DNA of 64,000 nucleotides, taken from positions 62,001-126,000 of the forward strand of contig NIVC01000714.1 in the NCBI GenBank assembly GCA_002269645.1, in the 5' to 3' direction. The notes under the pieces are model-generated. The model made no database searches. It saw nothing but the letters and a program-made list of their open reading frames with translations, and was not told where the DNA came from. A program made the translations under genes and the position numbers. This document shows positions 17,534 through 58,900 of the stretch, one piece after another; the stretch's first letter is position 1; every line of letters begins with the position of its first letter. The DNA comes from Macrostomum lignano. Lineage: Eukaryota.

Positions 17534-20025
17534 TCAAACGCTCGAGTCGACGAAGCATTTCAGCGCCTGAGCTTCGTCTGGTGGCATGAGCTGCCCATTT
17601 CTTGGAATTTGCTGCTCCTGCTGCTTCTGCTGCGGCTCCAGAAGCTGCTGCTGCTGCTGTTGGTTCTCAATTCGTCTCATCTGCTGAGCCGAGCTTTCCG
17701 CCTCGTTGCCATAGCAACCAGCCAAACAGCTGGGCAGCATCTGCACCAGACATGTCTTGAACCTGTTGTTACTGGCAACGTAGATGAAGAAGTTGCAGCT
17801 TCCGTCCAGTGAGCCAACGGCATTGGAGACCAGCGTCAGGGCGATGTACACACCTGGGGTCAGGTGGGTCAGGGTGATGTACACACCTGGGGTCAGGTTG
17901 GTCAGGGCGATGTACACACCTGGGGTCAGGTTGGTCAGGTTGATGTACACACCTGGGGTCAGGTTAGTCAGGGCTATGTACACACCTGGGGTCAGTTTGG
18001 TCAGGGCCATGTACACACCTGGGGTCAGTTTGGTCAGGGCTATGTACACACCTGGGGTCAGTTTGGTCAGGGCTATGTACACACCTGGGGTCAGTTTGGT
18101 CAGGGCCATGTACACACCTGGGGTCAGTTTGGTCAGGGCCATGTACACACCTGGGGTCAGTTTGGTCAGGGCTATGTACACACCTGGGGTCAGTTTGGTC
18201 AGGGCTATGTACACACCTGGGGTCAAGTGGGTCAGAGTGATGTACACACCTGGGGTCAGGTTGGTCAGGGCGATGACGCCCCAGGCCAGCTGCGGCAGCT
18301 GGCAGGCGATGTACAAGTTGGTGAGCATGAGCACAGTTCTGGTAGCCTGTCCGCTTCTCTGCTCGGCGCACCGTCTGGCCCGGTGTCCCTGGCCGTGCTG
18401 GCTGCGCAGCTCCCGGCCGGACCGGCGCACCCGCAGCACCGTCAGCCAGTTGCACACGCAGGCGGCCAGCACGGGGCCGCCGATCTGCAGGCCGAAGTTC
18501 ACCAAGCCGGTGTACATCCTGGTCAGCTTGGTGGTGGCGATCTCAGCGTAGTGCAGGCCGTCTGGACAGGCGGCCAGCCGGAGGTTGACCTCCATGAAGC
18601 GCGGGGTGCCGAGCGTCAGGGCGAGGATGCAGAGGCCGATTGTCACGCATTTGAGGTGGCGTCGGAGCGGCAGAGAGCGGCTTCTGTGGTTTGTAGAAGT
18701 TTCAGGTGCTTTCTTTAGGGCCGCGCACGAAATCGAACCATGGGGGTCGTGGCGCTACCCCTAGTAGTAAGAGTGACTCAGGTGGGACTCAGGTGTATCA
18801 TAGCTGACGCATTAAATGGCACTTTATCTCGAACAGCGAGATTGAATTATTCAATGTACCATGCAAGGTGACATTGGATTTTGACATTTCTTTACCGTCT
18901 AATCATCTCCTTTCAGGCTAAGTGCTGCAGTGGCGACAGAGCGCTTTTGCGGGCCTTTCAGCTGATTAAAGAAGCCGGATCCAATTAGCTAAATAACAGC
19001 CCACAGCTCTGCTACAAAATGACAGGGCGACACAGAATCGGTTCTTGGGTTTTTAATCTTCAAATTGCAACCCTGGATCATATTATCTAGCCTTAAATCA
19101 TGTGTTTGATTTCTGCGAAGCAGCTTGCTTGCCGATGGGGTGGTGGGTCAGTTATTGCGCACAAGTGGTGAAGCAGCTTGCCGATTGGGGTGGTGGGTCA
19201 GTCAGTGCGCACTACTAACTAACTAAATAAGTAATACGGCGCCTCAGCCATTGAACAGGCTCTTACGCCACAAGACTGACCCAAACAGGGCTGGTGGTGG
19301 GTCAGTCAGTGCGCACAAGTGAAGCGGCTCGCTTATCAATTGGGGTGTTGGGGTGGTGGGTCAGTCAGTGTGCACAAGTAAAGCGGCTCGCTTATCAATT
19401 GGGATGTTGGGGTGGTGGGTCAGTCAGTGCGCACAAGCGAAGCGGCTCGCTTATCGATTGGGGTGGTGGGTCAGGCCATAATTAAAGTCCAAAATTTAAC
19501 TGAGTGCGGGCTGGCAGCTATCGCCTATTATTTAATGTCATTAATTAATGAATTGAATGAAGGTGCAAACCTTAGGGGAGCGTAGATCTTGATGACTCTG
19601 GACAGAGCGATGAGCAGCATCAGCCAGTTGTGCGCCATCACCAGCGAGACTCTCAGCGCCCAAGCTGGCGGGTGCAGGTAGGCCAATGCCAGGTAGAACT
19701 CCCTAGAATGGCCGCCGCTCACCTGGAGCGTATGGCAGGCATTGTCTAGAAGGTTCAGCAGTACATAGAGCGTGTCCGGCACGGCCAGGTAGCGAAGTAA
19801 CCTGGCCAGCTCAGACTGAGCTCCCGCTCGAGTCAGCACCGCATAGGACAGGCTGTTGAGCAGTATTCCAGCGCCTGTGAGCAGCATCTGCGCCAGGTTC
19901 AGTAAGACTACCAGAGCCAGTAGTGGCCCGCTGCTCTGGTACCTGTAGTCCGCCTCGGTGCAGTTGACGATTTCCACGAATCTGTAGTACACGGCCGGGG
20001 CCGGAGTCCTGCCTGGGGCGAGCAT
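17534..20025 (-). CDS. Class A (rhodopsin-like) peptide GPCR, FMRFamide-receptor/Srw-like. About 534 aa with the internal repeat, about 402 aa without it
   Basis: Exons 20025-19571 (donor CTAAG|gtttgc) and 18683-17534 (acceptor accacag|), in frame. Seven hydrophobic segments: GILLNSLSYAVL, LRYLAVPD, LIALSRVIKIYAPLR, LGTPRFME, GPVLAACVCNWL, CQLPQL, DGSCNFFIY. Confidence 0.85.
17854..18270 (-). repeat. 33-bp in-frame tandem repeat (GVYIALTKLTP, 12 extra units) inside GPCR exon 2
   Basis: 13 occurrences of CCCCAGGTGTGTAC on the minus strand at 33-nt spacing. Confidence 0.95.
19120..19475. repeat. Degenerate about 45-55-bp repeat (..GGGGTGGTGGGTCAGTCAGTGCGCACAAG..) in the GPCR intron
   Basis: About 6 imperfect copies. 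Confidence 0.75.
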
Positions 20026-23872: not shown

Positions 23873-28080
<4,208 letters not shown>

Positions 28081-28474
28081 ATTTATAGATTTATAATGAT
28101 GATGTCTACCTCGATGGGAATTCTCAGACGGGATTATCGCACAGAATTGCTCCCACAGAGAAGCTCCAGCGAAAGACTCACAGAGACTCGAAGCTTGGAG
28201 CAGCTTATATTTATATACAGGCATGAGAAAGTGGATTGGACTCAAAAAACATTATAATGCGTGCCACGTATAAACTTGAGAAGCTGTTATAAAGCATTTA
28301 TTTATTATTTTATTGCTCAATTTAGCAGTTACAAAATTTGTGTTATTTTCTGTCCTGCTCCATCACACGGCCAGCCCCCCCCATGACTCCAGCCGAGAGG
28401 AGAGGGCGGAGACGAGAGCCATAAAGTTCTGCTGCCGCGCATGTGGGGACACCGGGAGAGAAAAGGGGAACTGA

Positions 28475-29172: not shown

Positions 29173-29329
29173 CTATTAATAGGCTGTAGAGTGCCGCCAC
29201 CGCTGGAGCAATTAGCGGGTGGCAACTGCGATGGAAGCTGGACAGTCGGTGGCGACGACTCGGTTGGATGTCCACCGGCAGTCCGGCGAGAGCTGACTCC
29301 TTCGTCTGATCTTTCGTCAGTGGCCATCG
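29173..29329 (-). CDS. Su(H): Candidate alternative upstream exon C of Su(H)
   Basis: Acceptor cccgcctgcag|, donor AATAG|gtgagt. Enters in phase 1 and exits in phase 2, matching the phase-2 start of core exon 26616. Confidence 0.6.
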
Positions 29330-29549
29330 CTGCAGGCGGGAGATGAGGCATCAAATTTCAGTTTGACAGCTTCTTTGACAGATTATTTGTGAGCTACAAT
29401 ATACGCGAACCAGTACAGCTCGATGGTAAGGATAAATAGGAAAAGATTATGCAATGGGCAGTGAGCAGCTGACATGAAAGTTTGTGTACGATAATTTAAA
29501 TTGCAAATTCTCTGCTTATCTGCTTATAAACCTGCGTGTCTGATTTAAA

Positions 29550-30683: not shown

Positions 30684-30691
30684 CGTGGGAA
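30684..30691 (+). promoter_or_regulatory. Canonical CSL/Su(H) binding site CGTGGGAA
   Basis: Exact match to the high-affinity CSL consensus, in the putative Su(H) 5' intronic region. Confidence 0.45.
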
Positions 30692-31609
30692 AATCGCCCC
30701 TAGAAGAACAGGTGACGCACGAAAAAGCAGGGCGCAGCTTTGAGTTAGACAGAACAGGTAAAGCAGCGCACGTGGCCACCAACCAACTGCCGTCACCCCA
30801 GCCACCACTTGACCAAGGAGATCCTTAAAACTTAGACAACTGGAGTGGAAACTCTTCTTGCCCAAAGCCTCGGCATTTTAAAGACAGTCGTAAGACAGAC
30901 CTAAATTCCACAAGACCTAAAGTTCACAAGACCTAAATTCCACAAAAACTTAAAGTTCACAAAGTATAATATTTGCAACCCTTAAATTTTAGGCGATACG
31001 AAATTAAAGGTCTTGTGAAAGCGCCACAAAAAAACTGAGTTTAGATTTAATTTGATTTCTAAATTCCCAAGTCATCGGTTTTCTAAGCCAAATTATTATC
31101 GAATATTATTTTGTAATGCCATGGTTTAAAGACGGTTAAGAGACTTTAGCTTCTTTAGAGTAACAAAGTGATACACAACAGTCGGAAATTGTCGGAAACA
31201 ACCTTTTTAGAAAGGTTTAGTCAATTGTGTAACTCCAGGTTGTTAGTTGACGATGTCCATGATCAAAACCCAACATCCTCTTATCATAGCGTCACATGGT
31301 GTGGCTTGCCCCCCCCCCTGCGCAGCTGGCAAAGTTCCCTATGATTGAGGCATGACCGAATGCTTCTCAATGCAATTCTCGCTTTAATATGATGTATGCA
31401 ATGAACTCGCGCTGTTTTGCCGACTTCAATATCGCTTCTTTCTTTTAAGTTTATAGATTTCTCTCTCTCTCTCTCCCTCCCCTCGCATTATAAACTTTAT
31501 TCGAACTCTAAAAACCCTAAGTACTTCCTCATCCAGTTAACAATAAAAATAATAGAATAATTAATACTAACAATAGTGTAGCCAGCCTCACAACACACTC
31601 TCTCCATTC

Positions 31610-31631
31610 CGTGGGAAAATAAGCGTGTGAA
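31610..31631 (+). promoter_or_regulatory. Pair of CSL sites, CGTGGGAA and CGTGTGAA (direct orientation, 6-nt gap)
   Basis: Both match YGTGDGAA and lie about 150 nt from the ATGGGAA minisatellite. Confidence 0.5.
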
Positions 31632-31776
31632 ATTCTCAGTCAGTTATTATGTTATGTTAGTTATAATATAAGCTTGATTAAACTGCGTTGCCACGGCAAC
31701 GGACCCCGGCTCTACGCAGACTTATGCAGCGGAGACTCACTGGAGATTGTCTTGAGAGAAAAAGGAGACCCGCTGG

Positions 31777-32830
31777 AGAATTCCCCAGATGGGAAATAGA
31801 AGAATTCCCCAGATGGGAAATGGTAGAATTCCCCAGATGGAAAATAGTAGAATTCCCCAGATGGGAAATAGAAGAATTCCCCAGATGGGAAATGGTAGAA
31901 TTCCCCAGATGGAAAATAGTAGAATTCCCCAGATGGTAAATAGAAGAATCCCCCATAATGCGAAATAGAAGAATTCCCCACCCAGATGGGAAACAAAGGA
32001 ATTCCTCATAGATGGAAAATAGAATAACCCCCCACAGATGGGAAATAGAAGAATTCCCCAGATGGGAAATAGAAGAACTCCCCACCAGATGGGAAATAGA
32101 AGAATTCCACCAGATGGGAAACAGAAGAATTCCCCAGATGGGAAATAGAAGAATTCCCCAGATGGGAAATAGAAGAATTCCACCAGATGGGAAATAGAAG
32201 AATTCCCCACCCAGATGGGAAACAAAGGAATTCCTCATAGATGGAAAATAGAATAACCCCCCACAGATGGGAAATAGAAGAATTCCCCAGATGGGAAATA
32301 GAAGAATTCCACCAGATGGGAAATAGAAGAATTCCCCACCAGATGGGAAATAGAAGAATTCCCCAGATGGGAAATAGAAGAACTCCCCACCAGATGGGAA
32401 ATAGAAGAATTCCACCAGATGGGAAATAGAAGAATTCCCCAGATGGGAAATAGAAGAATTCCCCAGATGGGAAATAGAAGAATTCCACCAGATGGGAAAT
32501 AGAAGAATTCCCCACCAGATGGGAAACAGAAGAATTCCCCAGATAGGAAATAGAAGAATTCCCCACCAGATGGGAAACAGAAGAATTCCCCAGATAGGAA
32601 ATAGAAGAATTCCCCAGATGGAAAATAGAAGAATTCCCCACCAGATAGGAAATAGAAGAATTCCCCAGATGGAAAATAGAAGAATTCCCCACCAGATAGG
32701 AAATAGAAGAATTCCCCAGATGGAAAATAGAAGAATTCCCCACCAGATAGGAAATAGAAGAATTCCCCAGATGGAAAATAGAAGAATTCCCCACCAGATA
32801 GGAAATAGAAGAATTCCCCAGATGGAAAAC
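31777..32830. repeat. 24-28-bp minisatellite GAATTCCCC(ACC)AGATGGGAAATAGAA
   Basis: About 40 units, of which about 25 retain ATGGGAA by hand count. Confidence 0.93.
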
Positions 32831-32895
32831 AGATACCGGCTAAAGAACAACATAGTGGAAGCGGACACCCCCTGAAAGGCATTCGGGAACCTCAC

Positions 32896-33360
32896 CGTTG
32901 TCCCGGCCGAATGCGGTTGACCCGCCAGCTGGCCAAGCAGCCCTGGCCGAGGCTGCGCCGCTAAAATCCACCGGCTCAACCTTAGAAGCTCGGGTGGCAT
33001 GCTGGTGCTGCCTTTTCAACGACTGCTGCTGATGATAAGCGTGCCTGGCACTACTGCTAGTAGTATTAGTAGGCGAGACTGAAGCAGCCGCAGCCGCGGC
33101 GGCCGCAGCAGCCGCTGCATAATTCAACTGATAATAACCGGCTGTCGCTGTTGCGGGCATCTCGCCAGCGGTGGGTGGACCTCCAGCTGCTGTAGCCGCA
33201 GCCGCAGCCGCCGCGGCGGCGGCCCGGGAAGCGGCTGCAGCTGCGGTAGCGGCCGAGAACATGGCTAGAGGAGACAGCGGCTGCTGACTAAACGGCGGCA
33301 GTGGGTACTGCTGCTCACTGCCGCCGCCACCGCTGCTGCCAAGGTGATGACTGTACGAAT
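32896..33360 (-). CDS. Su(H): Candidate upstream exon A of Su(H) (poly-Ala, low complexity)
   Basis: Frame open from acceptor cccctag| (33360) through ATG 33262 to donor AACG|gtgagg (phase 1), compatible with exon C. Contains poly-Ala and KVEPVD. Assignment to Su(H) is an inference. Confidence 0.55.
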
Positions 33361-36736: not shown

Positions 36737-37701
36737 TACTTCACAATCCCAAAAATTCACAATTCCTAAAATTCACAATCTCCAAGTTTAACAACCCCTA
36801 AGCTTCACAATCCCAAAGCTTCACAATCCACAACTTCAAAATCCCCAAAGATTCATAATCCCCAACCGTCACAATCCCCAGCTTCACAATTCCCAGGCTT
36901 AAAATCTTAAAATCTTCACAATCCCCAAGCTTCACAATTCCCAAGCTTAAAATCTCCAAAGCTTCACAATCCCCAAGCTTTAAAGTCCCCAAACTTTACA
37001 ACCTCAAAGCTTCATAATCCCCAACCGTCACAATCTCCAAGCTTCCAAGTCCCTTAAACTTTACAACCTCAAAGCTTCACAATCCCCAAACTTCACCCCC
37101 CAAGCTTTACAACCTTAAAGCTTCACAATCCCCAAACTTCACAATCCCCAAAGCTTCACAATCTGCAAACTTTACAACCTCAAAGCTTCATAATCCCCAA
37201 CCGTCACAATCCCCAAGCTTCACAATCCGCAAACTTTATAACCTCAAAGCTTCACAATCCCCAAGCTTTAAAGTCCCCAAACTTTACAACCTCAAAGCTT
37301 CATAATCCCCAACCGTCACAATCCCCAAGCTTCCAAGTCCCTTAAACTTTACAACCTCAAAGCTTTACAATCCCCAAAGCTTCACAATCCCCAAAGCTTC
37401 ACAATCCCCAAAGCTTCACACTCCCCAAGCTTCACAATCTGCAAACTTTACAACCTCAAAGCTTCATAATCCCCAACCGTCACAATCCCCAAGCTTCACA
37501 ATCCGCAAACTTTACAACCTCAAAGCTTCACAATCCCCAAGCTTCACAATCTGCAAACTTTACAACCTCAAAGCTTCATAATCCCCAAGCTTCACAATCT
37601 GCAAACTTTACAACCTCAAAGCTTCATAATCCCCAACCGTCACAATCCCCAAGCTTCACAATCCGCAAACTTTACAACCTCAAAGCTTCACAATCCCCAA
37701 G
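36737..37701 (+). repeat. About 16-bp array (AAGCTTCACAATCCCC)n, left arm of an inverted pair
   Basis: Reverse complement of the 39247-40565 array. Confidence 0.9.
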
Positions 37702-39246
37702 CATCTCTATTTGCGTGTCAGTGTGTCGCGAATTTCTAAACTTGCGAAATCGTTCTGCATGCTATTTTTAGAACTCTCAGAACTTATGGTGTTCAAACAA
37801 TTGCCTTTACCCCACCTCTCTATCAATCCCTTGATTCTTCCCAAGCCGCCGCTTGCCTTTAAATGTCGCGCATTGTGCCCCAGTGTGTTATTGTCTTGGG
37901 TGTTGAGCAAAAAATGGTCAATTGTCTAAGCATGACTGCAGCCAAATCCAGAGCTTTTGTCCTCATTTGTCTTCTATGGACTTGAAGTTTATTTAGGCTG
38001 TTCAAAAATTTGATTCTTTCTTCTACTAAGGATCACAGATTCTATAAACACTAGATGGCTCACTCAGCGAAAAATCTTGCTCCCAAACAGACCGTCTATG
38101 GTTGGAATCGCTATTTTTAGCCCTAGTGTTAAACGCAGGCTTTTAATGTGTTTTATACTCTTTCTACTTTGTTCTATTCTTATAGCTATGGGAAGTGAAA
38201 GCGAGGCATTTACCTCAAAATTGCCGAACTTTTTGCCATAACGTTTGATAGAAAAATCGAAGATGTCTTAAATTTCACACTGTCCTTCGTTTAGATAAAA
38301 GCAACATACTGTGAAAAGCTGACGTCAATAGGACCTGCTTGTCACACGTTATACCACAATTATCGGCACTTTAAAACAAAGGCATATCGTAAAAAGTCTC
38401 TTAAAGTGCCGATAATTGTCGCATAAATTCTGATTGGAAAATCCTACTGTCTTCAGATTTTCATAACCTGGTGCCATCATTTGTGGAGGTGGCTGGGTAA
38501 AACTTTTGCAGCCTGCAGCACAGCAGATTTTTGAGTTCATTACCAGAAGCTTGTTGGTCTTCGCCTTCGGTGTTCAGTGTCAAATATATAATTCTATCTA
38601 GTTGTTGCAGGAGAAAGAACTGGGTGTGCTAGAATCAGTGAGAGAAAAGTTTTTTTGCTGGCTCTACGCTAGTTATAAGCTGCTGGCGCGGGGGGCGAAG
38701 TCTCGCGAGCGAGGGATTCCAACCATAGACAGTGAGAATTTGGCCTCCACTGAAGGAATGGAGAGTGAGCCATCTAGTGTTTATAGAATCTGTGCTAAGG
38801 ATTAAATTACTTGCTTATCATAGATCTTATGTTCTATGGGGATTATTCAAGGTAAGAGAAAGTTCTTAGAAGACAGACACTGCCTGTTTTTTAATTAAAA
38901 CATTTCACAAGCATTGTGGAATTGCATTGCAGCAGTTCCCGTATGAACTGTTTTTTGTTTTATACAGTCAGGCTGTTTCCACAGTTTGAAAATTTCACCA
39001 TGGCATAAATTATCGCTGCTGTGTCATCGCTCTGGTATTTCCTGTTAGCTTTTGCTATTCCTAATTTTTGCCTTTCAATTCAAGATAGAGAGAAGAAGCT
39101 GCATGAATTTCGAAGAAGTCCAGTGAGGTAGTATTTCGATTTGGTCGATAAAATATTTACATGAGAGTTTTTCAACTTGCGGTACTTTTGTAGTTTTTAC
39201 GGCATTTTAAAGTTTCTGGATTGGGATGTTTAAGGGAGTATAAAAC

Positions 39247-40565
39247 TTGGGGATTGTGAAGCTTACTGTGAAGCTTGGGGATTGCGAAGCTTACTGTGAA
39301 GCTTGGGGATTGCGAAGCTTGGGGATTGTGAAGCTTGGGGATTGTGAAGTTTTGAGATTGTGAAGTTTGGAGATTGTGAAGCTTGGAGAATGTGAAGCTT
39401 GGGGATTCTGAAGCTTGGAGACTGTGAAGCTTGGGGATTCTGAAGCTTGGAGAATGTGAAGCTTGGGGGATTGTGAAGCTTGGGGATTGTGAAGCTTGGA
39501 GAATGTGAAGCTTGGGGGATTGTGAAGCTTGGGGATTCTGAAGCTTGGAGAATGTGAAGCGTGGGGGATTGTGAAGCTTGGAGACTGTGAAGCTTGGGGA
39601 TTCTGAAGCTTGGAGAATGTGAAGCTTGGGGGATTGTGAAGCTTGGGGATTGTGAAGTTTTGAGATTGTGAAGTTTGGAGATTGTGAAGCTTGGAGAATG
39701 TGAAGCTTGGGGATTCTGAAGCTTGGAGACTGTGAAGCTTGGGGATTCTGAAGCTTGGAGAATGTGAAGCTTGGGGGATTGTGAAGCTTGGGGATTGTGA
39801 AGCTTGGAGAATGTGAAGCGTGGGGGATTGTGAAGCTTGGAGAATGTGAAGCGTGGGGGATTCTGAAGCTTGGAGAATGTGAAGCGTGGGGGATTGTGAA
39901 GCTTGGAGAATGTGAAGCTTGGGGATTGTGAAGCTTGGAGAATGTGAAGCGTGGGGGATTCTGAAGCTTGGAGAATGTGAAGCTTGGGGGATTGTGAAGC
40001 TTGGGGATTGTGAAGTTTTGAGATTGTGAAGTTTGGAGATTGTGAAGCTTGGAGAATGTGAAGCTTGGGGATTCTGAAGCTTGGAGACTGTGAAGCTTGG
40101 GGATTCTGAAGCTTGGAGAATGTGAAGCTTGGGGGATTGTGAAGCTTGGGGATTGTGAAGCTTGGAGAATGTGAAGCGTGGGGGATTGTGAAGCTTGGAG
40201 AATGTGAAGCTTGGGGATTGTGAAGCTTGGAGAATGTGAAGCTTGGGGATTGTGAAGCTTGGAGAATGTGAAGCGTGGGGGATTCTGAAGCTTGGAGAAT
40301 GTGAAGCGTGGGGGATTGTGAAGCTTGGAGAATGTGAAGCTTGGAGAATGTGAAGCTTGGGGATTGTGAAGCTTGGGGATTGTGAAGCTTTGAGGTTGTA
40401 AAGTTTGGGGATTGTGAAGCTTTGGGGATTGTAAAACTTGGGGATTGTGAAGCTTGGGGATTGTGAAGTTTGGGGATTGTGAAGCTTTGGGGATTGTAAA
40501 ACTTGGGGATTGTGAAGCTTGGGGATTGTGAAGTTTGGGGATTGTGAAGCTTGGGATTGTGAAAT
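39247..40565 (-). repeat. About 16-bp array (GGGGATTGTGAAGCTT)n, right arm of an inverted pair
   Basis: Source of spurious ORF 39263-40597. Confidence 0.9.
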
Positions 40566-41002: not shown

Positions 41003-42600
41003 GATTAGGGCCGGATCTAGTGTGTCAGTAGGGGCGGATCTAGTGTGTCATTAGGGGCGGATCTAGTGTGTCATTAGGGGCGGATCTAGTGTGTCATTAG
41101 GGGCAAATCTAGTGTGTCATTAGGGGCGAATCTAGTGTGTCAGTAGGGGCGGATCTAGTGTGTCATTAGGGGCGAATCTAGTGTGTCATTAGGGGCGAAT
41201 CTAGTGTGTCATTAGGGGCGGATCTAGTGTGTCAGTAGGGGCGGATCTAGTGTGTCAGTAGGGGCGGATCTAGTGTGTCATTAGGGGCGGATCTAGTGTG
41301 TCATTAGAGTTGGATCTAGTGTGTCATTAGGAACGGATCTAGTGTGTCATTAGGGGCGGATCTAGTCTGTCATTAGGGGCGGATTTAGTGTGTCATTAGG
41401 GGCGGATCTAGTGTGTCATTAGGGGCAGATGTACGAGAACGGTATTGGAGACGGATTTGAAGTGTGGATAAGGCGGATTAGGAGCAGATTAGGGGCGGAT
41501 TGAGAGCGGATTAGGGAAAGATTAGGGGCGGATTGAGGGCGGATTGGGAGATAAGGGGCGGATTGGGAGAGATAAGGGGCGGATTGGGAGAGATAAGGGG
41601 CGGATTGAGGGCGGATTGGGGGCAGATTAGGGGCGGATTGAGGGGCAAATTAGGGGCGGATTAGGGGCAGATTGAGGGCGAATTCGAGGCGGATTAGGGG
41701 CGGATTGAGGGCGGGTTAGAGGCAAATTTAGAATGTGGATTAGGGGAGGATCCAGATGGCGGATTAGGGGAAGATTTACAAAGAGGGTTAGGCGAAGATC
41801 TACAGAGGCTATACAGGCCGGATCTTAATGGCGGATTAGGGGCGGATCTACATGGCGGATTAGGGGCGGATCTACATAACGGATTAGGGGAGGATCTACA
41901 GGGCGGATTAGGGGCGGATCTACATAACGGATTAGGGGAGGATCTACAAGGAGGATTAGATTAGGGGAGGATCTACAAAGAGAATTAGGTCAGGATCTAC
42001 AAAGAGGGTTAGGGGAGGATCTACAAAGAGGATTATTGGAGGATCTACAAAGAGGATTAGAGGATCTACAAAGAGGATTATTGGAGGATCTACAAAGAGG
42101 ATTAGGGGATGATCTGCAAAGACGATTATTGGAGGATCTACAAAGAGGATTATCGGACGATCTACAAAGAGGATTAGGGGAGGATCTACAAAGAGGATTA
42201 GGAGAGGATCTACAAAAAGAGGATTAGGGGAGGATCTACAAAGAGGATTATTGGAGGATCTACAAAGACGATTATTGGAGTATCTACAAAGAGGGTTAGG
42301 GGAGGATCTACAAAGAGGATTATTGGAGGATCTACAAAGAGGATTAGAGGATCTACAAAGAGGATTAGGGGATGATCTGCAAAGACGATTATTGGAGGAT
42401 CTACAAAGAGGATTATCGGACGATCTACAAAGAGGATTAGGGGAGGATCTACAAAGAGGATTAGGAGAGGATCTACAAAAAGAGGATTAAGGGAGGATCT
42501 ACAAAAAGAGGATTAGGGGAGGATCTACAAAAAGGATTATCGGAGGATCTACAAAGAGGATTAGGGGAGGATCTACAGGGCGGATTAGGATGGATGGATC
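41003..42600. repeat. TTAGGG-containing compound minisatellite whose unit changes along its length
   Basis: 23-bp TTAGGGGCGGATCTAGTGTGTCA, then ATTAGGGGCGG, then GAGGATCTACAAAGAGGATTAGGG. Confidence 0.88.
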
Positions 42601-43204
42601 TAGAGGTGGGCTAAAAAATTGAACTGCAGCAATATTTTACATCCTAGAGGTACAAATGTTAAAATTGAATAAACCAAGAGCCACATGTAAATCAATATGA
42701 TAGGCAAAATAAACGGACAAAAATATCTTATCTAATATATTTAAATATTAATCCAATATTTAATATTATACAATATTAATCGAACGCATGCAAATAGAAG
42801 AGAATAGCCAGGATTAACAGTTGTGCTTAGGAAAAAATTAATAGCTAGCAGTTAAAAGCTTTTATTATGAGTTAATTTAGCAGGAAAATCGAAGGTCAAA
42901 TAAGCTAATAATAAAAGTTACAGAAAATACAATTTGCTCTAGGATATTAATATTAATGCAGTTAGCAATGTCAGCAAGATACATTTATAATAACACATTT
43001 ATCTATTCTTGTACACAAAATAGGCCTATCTGCAGGTAAAAAAGTCGGCTTTTTAAAGTTGCTAAGATGAAAACTAAATAGCACAGAAACACGGGGATAT
43101 TGCCAAATCAAGGGCGCTTAAGAGACAAAATTTTCAACTGGTTAATTGTGCCTATGGGTGATGCATTGAAACTGAGCCTGCTTTTGCGCCAATTCGCATG
43201 CTGC

Positions 43205-52900: not shown

Positions 52901-55900
52901 GAAGACTCACCCAGCACAGCATGCCGCACCTCCTTGCACGGGTCGCAGACGGTCAAGGCCAGAGTTTGGAATCGCTCGCAGTCCAAGAGCGGCACCAAAG
53001 CTTGGCGTTTGCAAACGCGCAGCAGCGCTTTGGCCGCGCAGACTCGCATCTGCGCCATCTCGCCAGCTTCCAACTTGGCGCCTTTGCCCGAAGAAGAAGA
53101 AGACGGATTGCCGTCGTACAGAATGATCTGGTGGAACAGGTCCACAATGGATTGGGCCGTATCGGAGGTGCAGTCGGCGGCAGCGGACGATGAGGCAGCG
53201 GAAGCTGAGGCCAGCCCGATCAGGTAGTGACAGAGGCAGCGTATGCTGGCCAATTTCACCTGGGCAAGATGCGACAAAGACTCAGTAGGGCTCCAACGGC
53301 TCAAGTCTCTGGCTGAACTGGCAGCTGTCGATTTGCTGCGACTACCAGCAGCTGCGGCGCCTCCAGCGGATGATGAAGGAGCTTGCCGGACGAATTCGGG
53401 CAACCGCTTGGCGACAAGATTGGCTACTTTGGATTGGTACTTGAGGGCGCTCTGTTTTAGAATCTGTGGGGATTCGTTGTTGAATGAGAGGACTGAGACT
53501 GGGGTGACAATAGGGGTGAGACTGGATGATGAGATTACGGTGAGATTGGATGATGAGATTAGGGGTGAGACTGGGGGCAACATCAGGGGTGAGATTGGAT
53601 GATGAGATTAGGTAAAACTAACTAGGGGTGAGACTGGAGGTTAGGCTAGGGATGGGACTAGAGGTGAGACTGGATGATGAGACTAGAGGCGAGACTGGAT
53701 GATGAGACTAGAGGCGAGACTGGATGATAAGTTTAAAGATGAGACTAGAGGTAAGACTTAAATCGAAATTGAGATCGGATCATGAGACTGAGATTGAGCC
53801 CGAATGAGACTAGAATAGAACTGACCGGTGAGACTAGAAGCGCCCCTCCCCAGCAGACAATTAAAAAAGGCCAGAGTCAGACCTGTCCCAGAGCATCCAG
53901 CCTGGGCACGCAGAGTTCGCTGCCGGAGCTAATCTTGACGGCATCGGCCACCAGGCTGTCCAGCTCGCCGGCAATCTGCGGCGCCAGCTCCGTTGCCTGC
54001 AGCGCTGTCAGACACTTGGCCGCCACTTTGGCAAGCGACGAGCACGACGCCGAAGTTTTGGCGACGTCGCAGATTCGACGAAGACGCGGCACGACAGCGT
54101 CGATGGCTTCTTGTCGATCTTCGGTGAACAGCGGCGTCAAATTCAACAGCAGGCGAAGACAGACCTCGGCGGTGTCCATCTCCATGGACTCGTCGCCCAG
54201 GCATTCGACAACGTAGTCGAAGGTGTCGTCTAAATCGACAGTGTGCCTCAGATAGAAGCTGAGCATGTTGAGCAGCAGCAGGCCCTTGTGCTGGGTGACT
54301 TCGCACGCTTCGCCGGGCAAAATGTTGGCCGGGTCTTCGCGGCCGCTGATTAGCAGGTTCACCAGGCTGGTGACGGATTCGCGGTCGAATAGCACCGGGC
54401 CAACTCGTTCTAGCAGAGTCTTCACCGTGATGCGATAGTTGATGGCGTTCTCCGTCTCTTTAGCCTGGGAGTGGTTTCAGAGCAAATGGAGTGCGTCTTC
54501 AATGCTGCACAGCAACGGGGATTCGCCTTGGATACAACCTTGGTGAACGGGGGATTCCCCTTGGATACAACCTTGGGAGACGGAGATTCCTCTTGGATAG
54601 GACCTTGGAAAACGGGGATTCCCATTTGATAGGACCTTGAAAGACGGGGATTTCCCTTGGATAGGAACTTGAAAGACGAGGATTCCCCTTGGATACAACC
54701 TTAGAAGACCGGATCCATCTTGGATAGGACCTTGAAAGACGGGGATTCCCCTTGGATAGGACCTTGAAAGATGGGGATTCCCCTTGGATACAACCTTGGA
54801 AGACGGGATCCCTCTTGGATAGGACCTTGGAAAACGAGGGTTCCTCTTGGATAGGATAGAACCTTGGAAAAAGGATTCCCTTTGAAAACAATCAATAAAA
54901 ACGGGAATTTTCTTTCGATATACCTTGGAAAACGGGGATTCCTCTTGGATAAACCGTGGAAAAACGGAGATTCCCCTTGGCTGCGACTTTGGAAAACGGG
55001 GTTTCCATTTGATGCGACATTCAAAGCTACAGATGAAAACTTGATCATGACGGGAAGTCCCCTTAAATATAAAACCAATGCGCACCTTTTTGCCAATATG
55101 AAGAGCCTGATCGTGGCTAGCTAGCAGGCTTCGCAGCAGTTCCGCAGCCTTGTCGCACGGACAATCCTTGGACAGAATTTTGGTTAACAGCTGGCGCATC
55201 GGCTTCTCGCGGTGTAGAAAATTGAAGAATTTGCGCAAATACTCGTTGGCCCGTTCGGCGTGTTGGAAATAAATAGACAGAGATCGAAGCTTAGCCATGA
55301 TGACGGACTCGGATTCTGGAGACAGTTTATCTGGCTCGGCCGAGATTATCTCTAGGATGGCGCTGGTCAGCTGGGTCACGTGATACTGCGTCTTCAGCAT
55401 CTCCACTAGTGCCTGCATCGGAAATAATATTGAATATTCGTATTAGAGACAAAAGAATACTTCGCTTTTATTACTCATAGTAGTATCCAGCCAAAGCTTA
55501 TATTCAGTTTATTATTAAGGAGCCTTATAGGGCAATTAAACACATTAAGAAATTAGGCCTGTTAGTTCAATTAGGCATCCAATGGACCCAATTGGGCATT
55601 CTATGGACACAATTTCGGCACCACATAGACACATTTGGGCATCCTATAGACATTTAGGCACACCAGAGACACATTTGGGCATCCTATAGACATTTAGGCA
55701 CACCAGAGACACATTTGGGCACCCTATAGACACATTTGGGCATCCTATAGACATTTAGGCACACCAGAGACACAGTTAGGCACCCTATAGACACATTTGG
55801 GCACCCTATAGACACATTTTTAGGCACTTTATAGACACATTTTTAGGCACTTTATAGACACATTTTTAGGCACTTTATAGACACATTTTTAGGCATTTTA

Positions 55901-58900
55901 TAGACACATTTAGGCACTCTATAGACACATTTAGGCACATCATGGACACATTTGGACACCTTAGAAACACATTTTAGGCACACTATAGACAATTTTTTAG
56001 GCACCCTATAGACACATTTGGGCACCCTATAGACCCTATAGACACATAGTTAAGTCGTGGACCCATTTTAGCCCCATATAAAAGTTACCCACCCCCCACT
56101 ACGGACCCCAATAAGACCCACCGAAGTGATTATAAATCAAAAGCATAGCAATTTCTAAAACAACTCATCCAGACCTTAGTAGACGGATTGCTAAACGAGC
56201 AGAAGCAGCGCAGCAGGGCTCGCATCCGATCTTTTGAGCCCAGACTGTAGGGCACCAATGAGGCCTTGAAGTGCCGTTCCACTGCTATGCGATCCCAGTT
56301 GCTCTCCTAGAAGGCAGGCGACATGTTTAAAACGATTAAAAATTATATTATTTTCGATACATATTGGCGACGTTTTTTATTTACTTATCTTAAAGCCTTT
56401 TACTATTTTACATTACTCAAATCTCAACTTTTTAATCTCTATTCACTATAGTCATACACATTTTCTCATAAATCTATCACAATAAATCCAATTACAAAAA
56501 TTTCTTTTTTTGATGCTTTAACTCCATCATAGGGATACAGAACTATTTCACTAATCCCAATAATCCCACTAAGTCCCCCGCCGAAGTCAAATTATCTCAC
56601 CTCAGAAATCCCACAATCTCCACGTCCCTTAATCCCATCTCCCTAATTCCCACACCCCTATTCCTATCTTCTTAATCCTATTTACCTATTCCTATCTCCC
56701 TAATACCATCTCCTTAATCGAACATCCCTAATCCCATCTTGCGGATCCCATCTCGCAAATACCATCTCCCTAATTACATCTCGCAAATCCCATCTTCCTA
56801 ATCCTATCTACCTATTCCCATCTTCCTAATCCTATCTACCTATTCCCATCTTCCTAATCCTATCTACCTATTCCCATCTTCCTAATCCTATCTACCTATT
56901 CCCATCTTCCTAATCCTATCTACCTATTCCTATCTTCCTAATCCTATCTACCTATTCCTATCTTCCTAATCCTATCTACCTATTCCTATCTTCCTAATCC
57001 TATCTACCTATTCCTATCTTCCTAATCCTATCTACCTATTCCTATCTTCCTAATCCTATCTACCTATTCCTATCTTCCTAATCCTATCTACCTATTCCTA
57101 TCTTCCTAATCCTATCTACCTATTCCTATCTTCCTAATCCTATCTACCTATTCCTATCTTCCTAATCCTATCTACCTATTCCTATCTTCCTAATCCTATC
57201 TACCTATTCCTATCTTCCTAATCCTATCTACCTATTCCTATCTTCCTAATCCTATCTACCTATTCCTATCTTCCTAATCCTATCTACCTATTCCTATCTT
57301 CCTAATCCTATCTACCTATTCCTATCTTCCTAATCCTATCTACCTATTCCTATCTCCCTAATCCTATCTACCTATTCCTATCTCCCTAATACCATCTCCT
57401 TAATCGAATATCCCTAATCCTATCTCGTGAATCCCATCTCGCGGATCCCATCTCGCGGATCCCACCTCGCAAATCCCATCTCCCTAATCGCATCTCGCTA
57501 ATCCCATCTCCCTAATCACATCTTGTTAATCCCATCTCGTCAATCCCACACCCTAATCCCATCTCGCTAATCGCAACCCGGATATCGCATAAATAAAGCA
57601 ATCTAATCTCTTACCTGGAAGTACATGTGCATGATAGCATTAACGCACTGGGACAGCCTAGACCACACAGTTTTATTGCCAGACTTAATCAAATCAGCAT
57701 TCATACTGTAGGTTTTATAGATGCTGGCGAGGCTGGTGAGGGCAGCCCGGCGCACGCCTTGGTCTTTGTCGCGAGACCGATCAATTAAAATCGATAAATA
57801 GTCCTCCGGCAGGGACTCCAGCTCCTGCTTGGCCAGTTCAACTACTTGGCCAATCACGCAGTCTCTGATGTCCGTGTGGGCGTCAATACTTCGACCGCGG
57901 AGCAGCGCAACCAGGGTGTCACGCAGGTCGGGATTCGTTCGCAGCAGCTGAGGCACGGAGGCCACGCAGATTCGCCTGACCTCCAAGCTGACGTCAACAA
58001 ATCTACCGAGGAAAGCTTTCCACAGATCCGGCTGAAGCTGCACCAGATTCCCGGTGGTCTCGCTAAATAGCTTCGCCATAAGTCGGCAGGCCCGCTTCCG
58101 TTCGCGCTCGTGATTTGACAGCAGCTTCAGCTCAAGCATGGGCAGCACGGGACTCACGAACACGTGATCAATCTTGTGCAGCTCATAGATTAATGAGAAT
58201 ACTAATTCGTCTCTGATGCCAGACTGTTGAGACTTGAGCTGCGGCTGCTCATCGGAGTCCTCGGACGAGAGCACGAGCATATTCTGCAGCATCTGGTGAA
58301 TCATCTGATCCAGGTGCTTCACAGTTTCCTGCACAATGATAAGTAAGGGTAGGTAAGTAGTAGATTGTGAAACAAGCTGGTTGGCAACCAACATTTACTT
58401 GCCAGGGGCATTAAAACTTGTTGGCAGGGAACCAAAACCGGTTCCCGTTGCCAGGGCGATTTAAACTCGTAGCCAATGACACTAGAACCAGTTGCTAATG
58501 ACACTAGAACCAGTTGCTAATGACACTAGAACCAGTTGCTAATGACACTAGAACCAGTTGCTAATGACACTAGAACCAGTTGCTAATGACACTAGAACCA
58601 GTTGCTAATGACACTAGAACCAGTTGCTAATGACACTAGAACCGGTTGCTAATGACACTAGAGCCGGTTGCTAATGACACTACAACCGGTCGCTAATGAC
58701 ACTTGAACCGGTTGCTAATGACACTAGAACCGGTTGCTTAGGACACTAGAACCAGTTGCTAATGACACTAGAACCAGTTGCTAATGACACTAGCCGGTTG
58801 CTAATGACACTAGAACCGGTTGCTAATGACACTAGAACCGGTTGCTAATGACACTAGAGCCGGTTGCTAATGACACTAGAGCCGGTTGCTAATGACACTA

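What the first reader, a model, noticed from the sequence alone, without database searches (positions are those of the whole stretch)
31777..32830. Minisatellite of about 25 CSL-type motifs (ATGGGAA) inside the putative 5' region of the CSL gene
Seen: an array of about 1 kb whose unit carries ATGGGAA (about 25 intact copies by hand count) lies between candidate Su(H) exons A and B. The protein's DNA-contact motifs ([22 protein letters not shown]) are intact. Established: C. elegans LAG-1 binds RTGGGAA, and CSL genes are autoregulated through clustered sites (lag-1 locus; Drosophila Su(H) autoregulatory socket enhancer). Inference: the minisatellite may be a copy-number-tunable autoregulatory enhancer, silencer or CSL sink. 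Caveats: the context GATGGGAA is weaker than the CGTGGGAA consensus, the inverted TTCCC spacing (9 nt) does not fit a paired SPS site, and nearly every intron here has some array.
Basis: partly seen in the sequence, partly recalled or inferred. Interest (0 to 1): 0.72.

Follow-up and report, generated by a model that had tools for sequence, protein, structure and literature searches.

The report
CSL-motif minisatellite upstream of flatworm CSL gene
A real 1-kb tandem repeat carrying 25 weak binding motifs for the Notch-pathway factor CSL lies just 5' of that factor's own gene in a Macrostomum-type flatworm genome; it is most likely one of the many neutral repeats of this genome, but it sits beside a statistically unusual cluster of three strong CSL sites, so self-regulation of the gene is plausible and testable.

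Summary
Window 31777-32833 is a 1,057-bp minisatellite of 42 head-to-tail units (24-nt unit, with 23- to 29-nt variants). It has exactly 25 ATGGGAA, all as GATGGGAA on the + strand, antisense to a complete CSL/RBPJ gene of Macrostomum lignano type whose sure coding exons lie at 26616-23873 (-).

Against:
- 44% of the window is tandem arrays.
- An array in the CSL locus carrying RTGGGAA arises by chance with P about 0.04 (0.5 window-wide). A second such array lies in a PDS5 intron.
- 17 of 42 units have lost the GGG core, and a recently homogenised block is almost all dead units.
- There are no paired sites.
- 'Exon A' has no homologue and no codon bias, and is absent from the only public gene model. 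'Intronic' is therefore unproven.

For:
- ATGGGAA is an experimentally bound CSL site of intermediate strength.
- New here: all three CGTG(G/T)GAA sites of the 64-kb window fall in the 2.4 kb between the array and the gene (P about 0.002).

Most likely this is a neutral minisatellite beside a plausible CSL autoregulatory region, possibly an accessory bank of weak sites. Binding and reporter tests are needed.

The parts
31777..32833 (+). Minisatellite of 42 units. The unit is GAATTCCCCAGATGGGAAATAGAA, with 23- to 29-nt variants mostly carrying extra bases (ACC/CC) before AGATGG. 25 units carry GATGGGAA and 17 carry GATGGAAA, GATAGGAA or other dead cores.
31778..31945 (+). Sub-block I: a 72-bp higher-order repeat (three units), 99% self-identity at lag 72. 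4 intact motifs in 7 units.
31946..32531 (+). Sub-block II: mixed 23- to 29-nt units with a duplication at a 229-bp lag (units 9-11 = 18-20). It holds 20 of the 25 intact motifs.
32532..32833 (+). Sub-block III: a 51-bp higher-order repeat (24+27 nt) in about 6 copies, 93-97% self-identity. Only 1 of 12 units is intact (ATAGGAA x6, ATGGAAA x5).
30684..30691 (+). Canonical high-affinity CSL site CGTGGGAA in unique DNA, 1.36 kb 5' of candidate ATG 29327.
31610..31631 (+). Two canonical CSL sites in tandem, CGTGGGAA (31610-31617) and CGTGTGAA (31624-31631), lying 146-167 bp from the array edge.
26175..26616 (-). CSL core exon C1 ([11 protein letters not shown]...RRIK), containing [11 protein letters not shown]. 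Acceptor cgcag|T, phase 2.
24841..25281 (-). CSL core exon C2 (VISKPSKKK...IIQFQ), containing [11 protein letters not shown].
23873..24376 (-). CSL core exon C3 (ASPDPKD...LASP, then the stop codon).
29173..29327 (-). Candidate first coding exon ('exon 1', MATDERSDEG...). A strong acceptor (ctcccgcctgcag) lies 2 nt before the ATG, a possible spliced-leader site. The donor is AG|GTGAGT, phase-compatible with C1. It is the first exon of the public M. lignano model A0A1I8F7W9.
27536..28080 (-). Candidate alternative 5' coding exon ('exon B', MDPEQQ..., Gln/His-rich). TATA-like boxes lie upstream and the donor CAG|GTCTGA is phase-compatible with C1. No homologue, and GC3 is 0.51.
32896..33262 (-). 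It is frame-compatible with exon 1 and with exon B. It has no homologue, no Pfam match and no codon bias, and is not in the public model.
56625..57572 (-). Second array of the window carrying ATGGGAA in its consensus unit (4 ATGGGAA plus one TGTGGGAA site; core AGATGGGAATAG on the - strand). It lies between PDS5-matching ORFs, in a putative PDS5 intron, and is the best match to the CSL-proximal unit elsewhere in the window.

Best explanation
The feature is an ordinary, neutrally evolving minisatellite of the repeat-rich Macrostomum lignano-type genome. It was made and reshaped by replication slippage and unequal exchange, as its higher-order repeats of 72, 51 and about 229 bp show.

Its 24-nt unit happens to contain GATGGGAA, a CSL site of intermediate to low affinity, so amplification produced 25 copies 5' of the CSL gene. 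The unit may possibly have been seeded from a site-rich stretch.

The array was not built or kept for CSL binding. If the gene regulates itself, the working core is the three canonical sites (CGTGGGAA x2, CGTGTGAA) in the unique DNA between the array and the gene. The array would at most add weak, unselected occupancy.

Shown: the anatomy, the motif counts, the background of arrays, the decay of the motif within the array, and the placement of the canonical sites. Inferred: neutrality, and autoregulation through the unique sites.
For: - 27.9 kb of the 64 kb (44%) is tandem arrays: 55 arrays, 41 of them 200 bp or longer. The sure CSL introns are 93% and 67% array. [quoted passage not shown]
- In unit-shuffling simulations, 0.69 arrays per window are expected to carry RTGGGAA, with P(>=1) = 0.52. 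Two were observed, the second in a putative PDS5 intron. For the 7 arrays of the CSL locus, P = 0.04.
- Other arrays amplify other transcription-factor cores with no matching gene nearby: kappaB-like x19, TAATCC x32 and x28, CAGGTG x12.
- Within the array, the most substituted columns are two of the three G's of the core. 17 of 42 units are dead, and the homogeneous 51-bp block has 1 intact unit in 12.
- All sites point the same way, so there are no paired (SPS) sites.
- No terminal inverted repeats flank the array, and no protein homologue exists for its open frames.
Against: - The array lies next to the one gene whose product reads its motif. The local chance is about 0.04.
- It sits 146-167 bp from two canonical CSL sites and about 1.1 kb from a third. 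These are the only CGTG(G/T)GAA sites in 64 kb (P about 0.002 for the placement).
- ATGGGAA is bound by LAG-1 in EMSA, and a site cluster in the lag-1 first intron is functional (PMC4133882).
- The dead units stem from few mutational events spread by higher-order amplification, so motif decay is weak evidence against selection.
- Two other eukaryotic CSL loci used as controls show no such clustering, so the clustering here is not a generic property of CSL loci.
Confidence: 0.55

Rival explanations
1. The array is a working part of a CSL autoregulatory module. It would be a homotypic bank of about 25 intermediate-affinity sites which, together with the three adjacent canonical sites, recruits CSL (repressor without Notch, activator with NICD) to the gene's own 5' region. 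Copy number would then tune the output or buffer free CSL, acting as enhancer, silencer or sink.
For: - 25 GATGGGAA in 1,057 bp, against 16 RTGGGAA in the other 63 kb.
- Local chance of about 0.04.
- An adjacent cluster of canonical sites in the same orientation.
- AATGGGAA gives >2-fold NICD response and is frequent in CSL ChIP peaks (PMC4176381).
- Su(H) has its own autoregulatory enhancer (PMC3390367).
- The DNA-binding domains of this CSL are canonical.
- If exon A is real, the array starts 62 nt into intron 1.
Against: - The finding was picked from a scan, so its P of 0.04 carries a look-elsewhere cost.
- 40% of units lack the core, and a recently homogenised block is almost all dead.
- Position 1 is G, not the preferred C/T, and position 2 is A (PMC4176381).
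- There are no paired sites.
- A similar core is amplified in a putative PDS5 intron.
- There are no data on binding, accessibility, conservation or polymorphism.
Confidence: 0.3
2. The array does not belong to the CSL transcription unit at all. 'Exon A' would be the last coding exon of a separate upstream gene on the minus strand. Its stop codon lies 7 nt before the array, so the array would sit in that gene's 3' UTR or in intergenic DNA, with an AATAAA at about 31500.
For: - The exon A ORF is open for 42 codons upstream of its ATG, back to a possible acceptor (tttcag|TTC), and ends in TAG at 32840-32842, just before the array.
- An AATAAA lies on the minus strand near 31500.
- The public model of the CSL gene starts at 29327.
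- M. lignano has many trans-spliced and polycistronic units (PMC5730564).
Against: - The ORF has no homologue in 1.84 billion representatives, no Pfam match and no codon bias, so it may not be coding at all.
- It also has a good donor (GTGAGG) and is frame-compatible with the CSL exons.
Confidence: 0.1
3. The array is read by other factors that recognise GGGAA/GGAAA-type purine cores, such as Ikaros-like zinc fingers or Rel/NFAT-type factors, rather than by CSL.
For: The unit holds TGGGAA and GGGGAATTC (on the opposite strand). The 'dead' variants create TGGAAAA x9, an NFAT-like core. That these cores are shared by several factor families is from my own knowledge, not from a tool.
Against: There is no strict kappaB decamer in the array (0 matches), no evidence for any such factor here, and the same chance argument applies as for CSL.
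Confidence: 0.04
4. The repeat is protein-coding: a long open frame (31678-33000, 440 aa) runs through it on the minus strand.
For: Units of 24 or 27 nt keep the frame, and five of the six frames are open.
Against: - There is no homologue among 5.8 billion proteins.
- The frame drifts between units of 23, 25, 28 and 29 nt.
- Open frames are expected for any stop-free unit divisible by three.
Confidence: 0.01

Closest known systems
[quoted passage not shown]
   Same: Many NTGGGAA sites (13 in 1,758 bp there, 25+3 in about 2.2 kb here) lie in the 5' part of the CSL gene itself. ATGGGAA is among the sites shown to compete for LAG-1.
   Different: - The paper does not describe the lag-1 cluster as a tandem array, and it was shown to work by EMSA, ChIP and reporter mutation.
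- Here 25 of the sites are copies of one unit, 40% of units are dead, the intronic position is unproven and nothing is tested.
Drosophila Su(H) Autoregulatory Socket Enhancer ASE5 (Liu and Posakony 2012, PMC3390367)
   Same: It is a CSL gene with a nearby module of CSL sites for self-regulation. The three unique CGTG(G/T)GAA sites here resemble its high-affinity sites.
   Different: ASE5 lies just downstream of the gene, has five high-affinity sites plus POU-homeodomain and other inputs, and is not repetitive.
Ordinary minisatellites / VNTRs of the M. lignano genome (Wudarski et al. 2017, PMC5730564)
   Same: It shows head-to-tail units of 10-100 nt, higher-order repeats and a non-coding position, and is one of 41 such arrays in this window.
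   Different: Nothing structural differs. Only the coincidence of its motif with the neighbouring gene sets it apart.
Tandem-repeat enhancers / VNTRs with embedded factor sites (e.g. PMC13373173, PMC3762855, PMC8096271)
   Same: The idea is that a repeated unit carrying a factor site acts as a copy-number-dependent regulatory element.
   Different: Those cases rest on expression or binding data. Here there is sequence only.
Su(H) paired sites (SPS)
   Same: They use the same CSL core motif.
   Different: An SPS needs two sites head to head at a fixed short spacing for NICD dimer cooperativity. Here all sites are head to tail at 23-29 nt.

Membership tests
Minisatellite (tandem repeat, unit 10-100 nt) | Head-to-tail copies of one unit, many copies, far beyond chance | tested here: met
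   42 copies, period 24, 84% matches. 38 matches of the unit against 0 in shuffles.
Minisatellite (tandem repeat, unit 10-100 nt) | Higher-order repeat structure from unequal exchange or slippage | tested here: met
   Self-identity is 99% at lag 72, 93-97% at lag 51 and 72% at lag 229.
Minisatellite (tandem repeat, unit 10-100 nt) | Length polymorphism between individuals (VNTR) | not testable with these tools
   Only one copy of the locus was available. The public M. lignano model and the window ORFs I tried were not on record in the assemblies collection.
CSL-site cluster acting in CSL autoregulation (lag-1 intron-1 type) | Density of RTGGGAA/YGTGRGAA sites far above background | tested here: met
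   25 sites in 1,057 bp, against 16 in the other 63 kb and 18.3 expected for the whole window. In addition, 3 of the window's 3 CGTGKGAA sites lie in the adjacent 2.4 kb.
CSL-site cluster acting in CSL autoregulation (lag-1 intron-1 type) | Location in the CSL gene's first intron or immediate regulatory region | tested here: inconclusive
   The array lies 5.2 kb 5' of the first sure coding exon and 2.45 kb 5' of the ATG of the public model. It is intronic only if exon A is real, and exon A is unsupported but frame-compatible.
CSL-site cluster acting in CSL autoregulation (lag-1 intron-1 type) | Sites bound by the species' CSL in vitro and in vivo | not testable with these tools
   Only literature on other species is available. 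ATGGGAA competes for LAG-1 (PMC4133882) and AATGGGAA is intermediate for fly CSL (PMC4176381). GATGGGAA itself was not found tested.
CSL-site cluster acting in CSL autoregulation (lag-1 intron-1 type) | Sites preserved (purifying selection on the core) | tested here: not met
   17 of 42 units have substitutions in the GGG core, which holds the most substituted columns. The 51-bp higher-order block has 1 intact unit in 12. Conservation across species could not be tested.
CSL-site cluster acting in CSL autoregulation (lag-1 intron-1 type) | Expression of the gene depends on the sites | not testable with these tools
   This needs a reporter or a deletion in M. lignano.
Su(H) paired site (SPS) | Two CSL sites head to head at short fixed spacing | tested here: not met
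   There is no TGGGAA on the minus strand within the array. The canonical pair at 31610/31624 is also head to tail.
Transposon-borne satellite | Array flanked by terminal inverted or long terminal repeats, with copies elsewhere | tested here: inconclusive
   No inverted repeats flank the array, and the unit is found nowhere else in the window. The two metagenome hits are single-copy chance matches.
CSL / RBPJ / Su(H) / LAG-1 protein family (the neighbouring gene) | LAG1-DNAbind, BTD and TIG domains with the DNA-contact segments | tested here: met
   The protein aligns over 434 residues with human RBPJ 2F8X, E 1.5e-206. The closest protein is M. lignano A0A1I8F7W9, 97-98% identical on exon 1 and core exon C1.

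The most novel reading that the evidence does not exclude
A copy-number-variable minisatellite serves as a tunable bank of low-affinity CSL sites in the CSL gene's own 5' region or first intron, working with three flanking high-affinity sites. Array length, and the share of live units, would then set the strength of Notch-effector autoregulation or titrate free CSL. That would be a convergent, repeat-built counterpart of the lag-1 intron cluster.
Probability: 0.2. Interest if true: 0.7.

Novelty: new member of a known kind. Interest (0 to 1): 0.35.

Why it matters
If the array, or the canonical sites next to it, is bound by CSL, this would be a third, independent animal lineage (Platyhelminthes) in which the Notch nuclear effector regulates its own gene through clustered sites. 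It would also show that a fast-mutating tandem repeat can supply such sites. M. lignano has transgenesis, so the question is directly testable.

If the array is neutral, as I think more likely, the case is a useful caution. In a genome where about 40% of a locus is minisatellites, arrays full of recognisable factor motifs are the rule and say little by themselves.

Tried and rejected
1. **Transcript or homology support for the 5' exons.**
   - The exon A+B peptide found nothing among 5.8 billion proteins.
   - The exon A ORF found nothing among 1.84 billion representatives and has no Pfam match.
   - N-termini of CSL proteins from other animals are not conserved, so homology cannot decide.
2. 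**Dispersal of the repeat family.**
   - The translated array ORF found no protein.
   - The 28-nt unit pattern found nothing in metagenome contigs.
   - A 22-nt pattern gave two single-copy chance matches in unrelated AT-rich coding DNA, and nothing in viral contigs.
   - The flatworm genome itself is not in any searchable DNA collection here.
3. **Fetching other copies of the locus.** The M. lignano model and two window ORFs are not on record.
4. **Origin of the unit from the flanking canonical sites.** A local alignment scan does not place those flanks among the best matches. The best match is the array in the putative PDS5 intron.
5. **The two CGTGGGAA sites as one duplication.** Rejected, because their flanks are unrelated.
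6. **A transposon origin.** No flanking inverted repeats were found.
7. **A coding repeat.** Rejected.
8. **A general habit of CSL genes to carry site clusters.** Two other eukaryotic CSL loci show none.

Full report
**What is there.** The stretch 31777-32833 is one tandem array. Tandem Repeats Finder gives period 24 (also 51), 42.0 copies, 84% matches and consensus AGAATTCCCCAGATGGGAAATAGA, and the raw sequence shows it directly. Cutting at the GAATTCC anchor gives 42 units of 23-29 nt. Exactly 25 units carry ATGGGAA, always as GATGGGAA and always on the + strand. The array has no GTGGGAA and no site on the other strand. The unit with up to 3 mismatches occurs 38 times, all in the array, against none in shuffles. 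The observation and the hand count are therefore correct.

**Organism and gene.**
- The closest protein to the core is a Macrostomum lignano entry, UniRef100_A0A1I8F7W9. It is a poor gene model of essentially the same sequence, 97-98% identical on exon 1 and core exon C1. The window is therefore M. lignano or a very close relative or copy.
- I placed three sure coding exons by tblastn and splice sites: C1 26616-26175, C2 25281-24841 and C3 24376-23873, the last ending in the stop codon.
- Their product aligns over 434 residues with human RBPJ (2F8X, E 1.5e-206) with the DNA-contact segments intact. Canonical DNA specificity is a fair inference.
- Neighbouring genes are a laminin-N/netrin-like gene (+, 2.4-6.9 kb), a rhodopsin-type receptor (-, 17.5-20 kb) and PDS5 (-, 50.8-62.7 kb).

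**Is the array inside the gene?** This is open. There are three candidate 5' coding exons.
- 'Exon 1' (29327-29173) has a strong acceptor 2 nt before its ATG and the donor AG|GTGAGT. It is the first exon of the public model.
- 'Exon B' (28080-27536) is Gln/His-rich and has TATA-like boxes upstream.

All three are phase-compatible with the core. Exon A also reads in frame into exon 1 or into exon B. None of them looks like the real exons in composition. GC3 is 0.51-0.55 against 0.82-0.84, and the codon log-odds are -0.31 to +0.02 against +0.65 to +0.83.

Exon A and exon B have no homologue and no Pfam match. N-termini of CSL proteins are not conserved, so homology cannot decide. Some CSLs start at the Met that lies inside C1 here.

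M. lignano uses spliced-leader trans-splicing for about 39% of genes (PMC5730564). The acceptor before ATG 29327 could be such a site. So the array is certainly 5' of the gene: 5.2 kb from C1 and 2.45 kb from the ATG of the public model. Whether it is in intron 1, in upstream DNA, or in the 3' region of an unrelated upstream transcript cannot be told from sequence.

**Background.**
- The window holds 55 tandem arrays, 41 of them 200 bp or longer, covering 27.9 kb or 44%.
- The two sure CSL introns are 93% and 67% array.
- I shuffled each array's consensus unit and asked how often RTGGGAA appears. The result was 0.69 arrays expected per window and P(at least one) of 0.52. Two were observed.
- For the 7 arrays in or next to the CSL gene, the expectation is 0.042 and P is 0.04.
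- The second motif-bearing array (56625-57572) lies between PDS5-matching ORFs, in a putative PDS5 intron. It is also the best match to the CSL-proximal unit anywhere else in the window (core AGATGGGAATAG).
- Other arrays amplify other recognisable factor cores with no matching gene nearby: kappaB-like decamers x19 at 54515-55006, TAATCC x32 and x28, and CAGGTG x12.

The array on its own is therefore a coincidence at about the 4% level locally. After a genome-wide scan that is weak.

**Signs of constraint inside the array.** There are none.
- In the aligned units, the most substituted columns are two of the three G's of the core (6 and 10 of 42 units). 17 units read GATGGAAA, GATAGGAA, GATGGTAA and the like.
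- The array is built from higher-order repeats: 72 bp at 99% self-identity, 51 bp at 93-97%, and a 229-bp duplication.
- The homogeneous 51-bp block at 32532-32833 has a single intact motif in 12 units.
- Published data say substitutions at core positions 4-6 reduce binding to about 50 uM or worse (PMC4176381).
- This pattern fits expansion blind to the motif. Only a few mutation events underlie it, though, so it is not strong evidence against function.

**Quality of the sites.**
- ATGGGAA oligonucleotides competed well for LAG-1 (PMC4133882).
- For fly CSL, AATGGGAA competed only at 125-fold excess and gave just over 2-fold NICD response. C at position 1 is preferred 3-4-fold over T (PMC4176381).
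- GATGGGAA itself I did not find tested.
- All sites are head to tail at 23-29 nt, so there are no paired sites.

If this gene is self-regulated, canonical sites should lie in the unique DNA nearby.
- The window has three CGTG(G/T)GAA sites, no more than chance overall (2.63 expected).
- All three lie at 30684, 31610 and 31624, in the 2,449 bp between ATG 29327 and the array. They have the same orientation as the array motifs.
- Markov simulations from the window's unique sequence give P = 0.002 for two CGTGGGAA in that stretch. They give fewer than 1 in 2,000 for three CGTG[GAT]GAA, and 0.01-0.04 for looser definitions.
- The flanks of 30684 and 31610 are unrelated, so they are not one duplication.
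- The region was defined after I had seen the sites, so these values are indicative only.
- Two other eukaryotic CSL loci fetched as controls show no such cluster.
- This supports autoregulation of the gene through its 5' region. It says less about the array itself.

**Verdict.**
- Most likely (about 0.55): the array is one more neutral minisatellite whose unit contains a weak CSL site. It lies beside a plausible autoregulatory stretch whose core is the three canonical sites.
- Main rival (about 0.3): the array is a working bank of low-affinity sites in that module.
- The known precedents are the lag-1 intron cluster (PMC4133882), the Su(H) ASE5 enhancer (PMC3390367) and tandem-repeat enhancers in general. 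Even the rival reading would therefore be a new member or variant of known kinds.
- What I could not do is search the flatworm genome for the unit, see other copies of the locus, or see transcripts. Those steps, with EMSA, CUT&RUN and reporters in M. lignano, would decide the matter.

Noticed in passing
window 30684-30691, 31610-31617, 31624-31631 (+): The only three CGTG(G/T)GAA (canonical CSL) sites of the 64-kb window lie within 950 bp of each other, between the array and the CSL gene. The second and third are 14 bp apart, head to tail.
   Followed up: yes
window 56625-57572: A 14/28/84-nt array between PDS5-matching ORFs (a putative PDS5 intron) carries AGATGGGAATAG / AGATAGGAATAG on the minus strand: 4 ATGGGAA plus one TGTGGGAA. 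It has the same G/A variant pair as the CSL-proximal array. It may be a distant relative of that unit or a chance match.
   Followed up: partly
window 36739-37702 and 39246-40563: Two long arrays have the same 16-nt unit in opposite orientation (CTTCACAATCCCCAAG versus CTTGGGGATTGTGAAG). They flank about 1.5 kb, forming a large inverted pair of minisatellites.
   Followed up: no
window 54515-55006: An array with a 32/63-nt unit contains the palindromic kappaB-type sequence GGGGATTCCCC. 19 of the window's 21 matches to GGGRNWYYCC fall here.
   Followed up: partly
window 17835-18275 (within minus ORF 17534-18646): A 33-nt minisatellite (13.4 copies, 93%) keeps an open frame as an 11-residue repeat (LTKLTPGVYIA...) inside a long ORF that has a weak, sub-threshold match to rhodopsin-type 7TM receptors (7tm_1, 22.8 bits against a 30.5 cut-off). 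It is either a coding repeat in a receptor or an intron that happens to stay open.
   Followed up: no
window 24377-24840 and 25282-26174: The two sure CSL introns consist almost wholly of arrays (67% and 93%). An (AGT)104 microsatellite runs to within about 12 nt of the 3' splice site of exon C3.
   Followed up: partly
window 41004-42606 and 56625-57572: Arrays built on GGATTA/TAATCC (the K50-homeodomain core) hold 32 and 28 copies, out of 99 in the window. No Otx/Pitx-type gene was recognised among the ORFs I scanned.
   Followed up: partly
window 29329-29331 and 28080-28220 (minus strand): A strong 3' splice site lies 2 nt before ATG 29327 and may be a spliced-leader acceptor. TATA-like boxes lie before the ATG of exon B. 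The CSL gene may have alternative 5' ends.
   Followed up: partly
L001 8016-8037, L002 5271-5292: Two JGI metagenome contigs share an identical AT-rich coding stretch that contains the 22-nt pattern once. It is a chance match with no repeat.
   Followed up: yes
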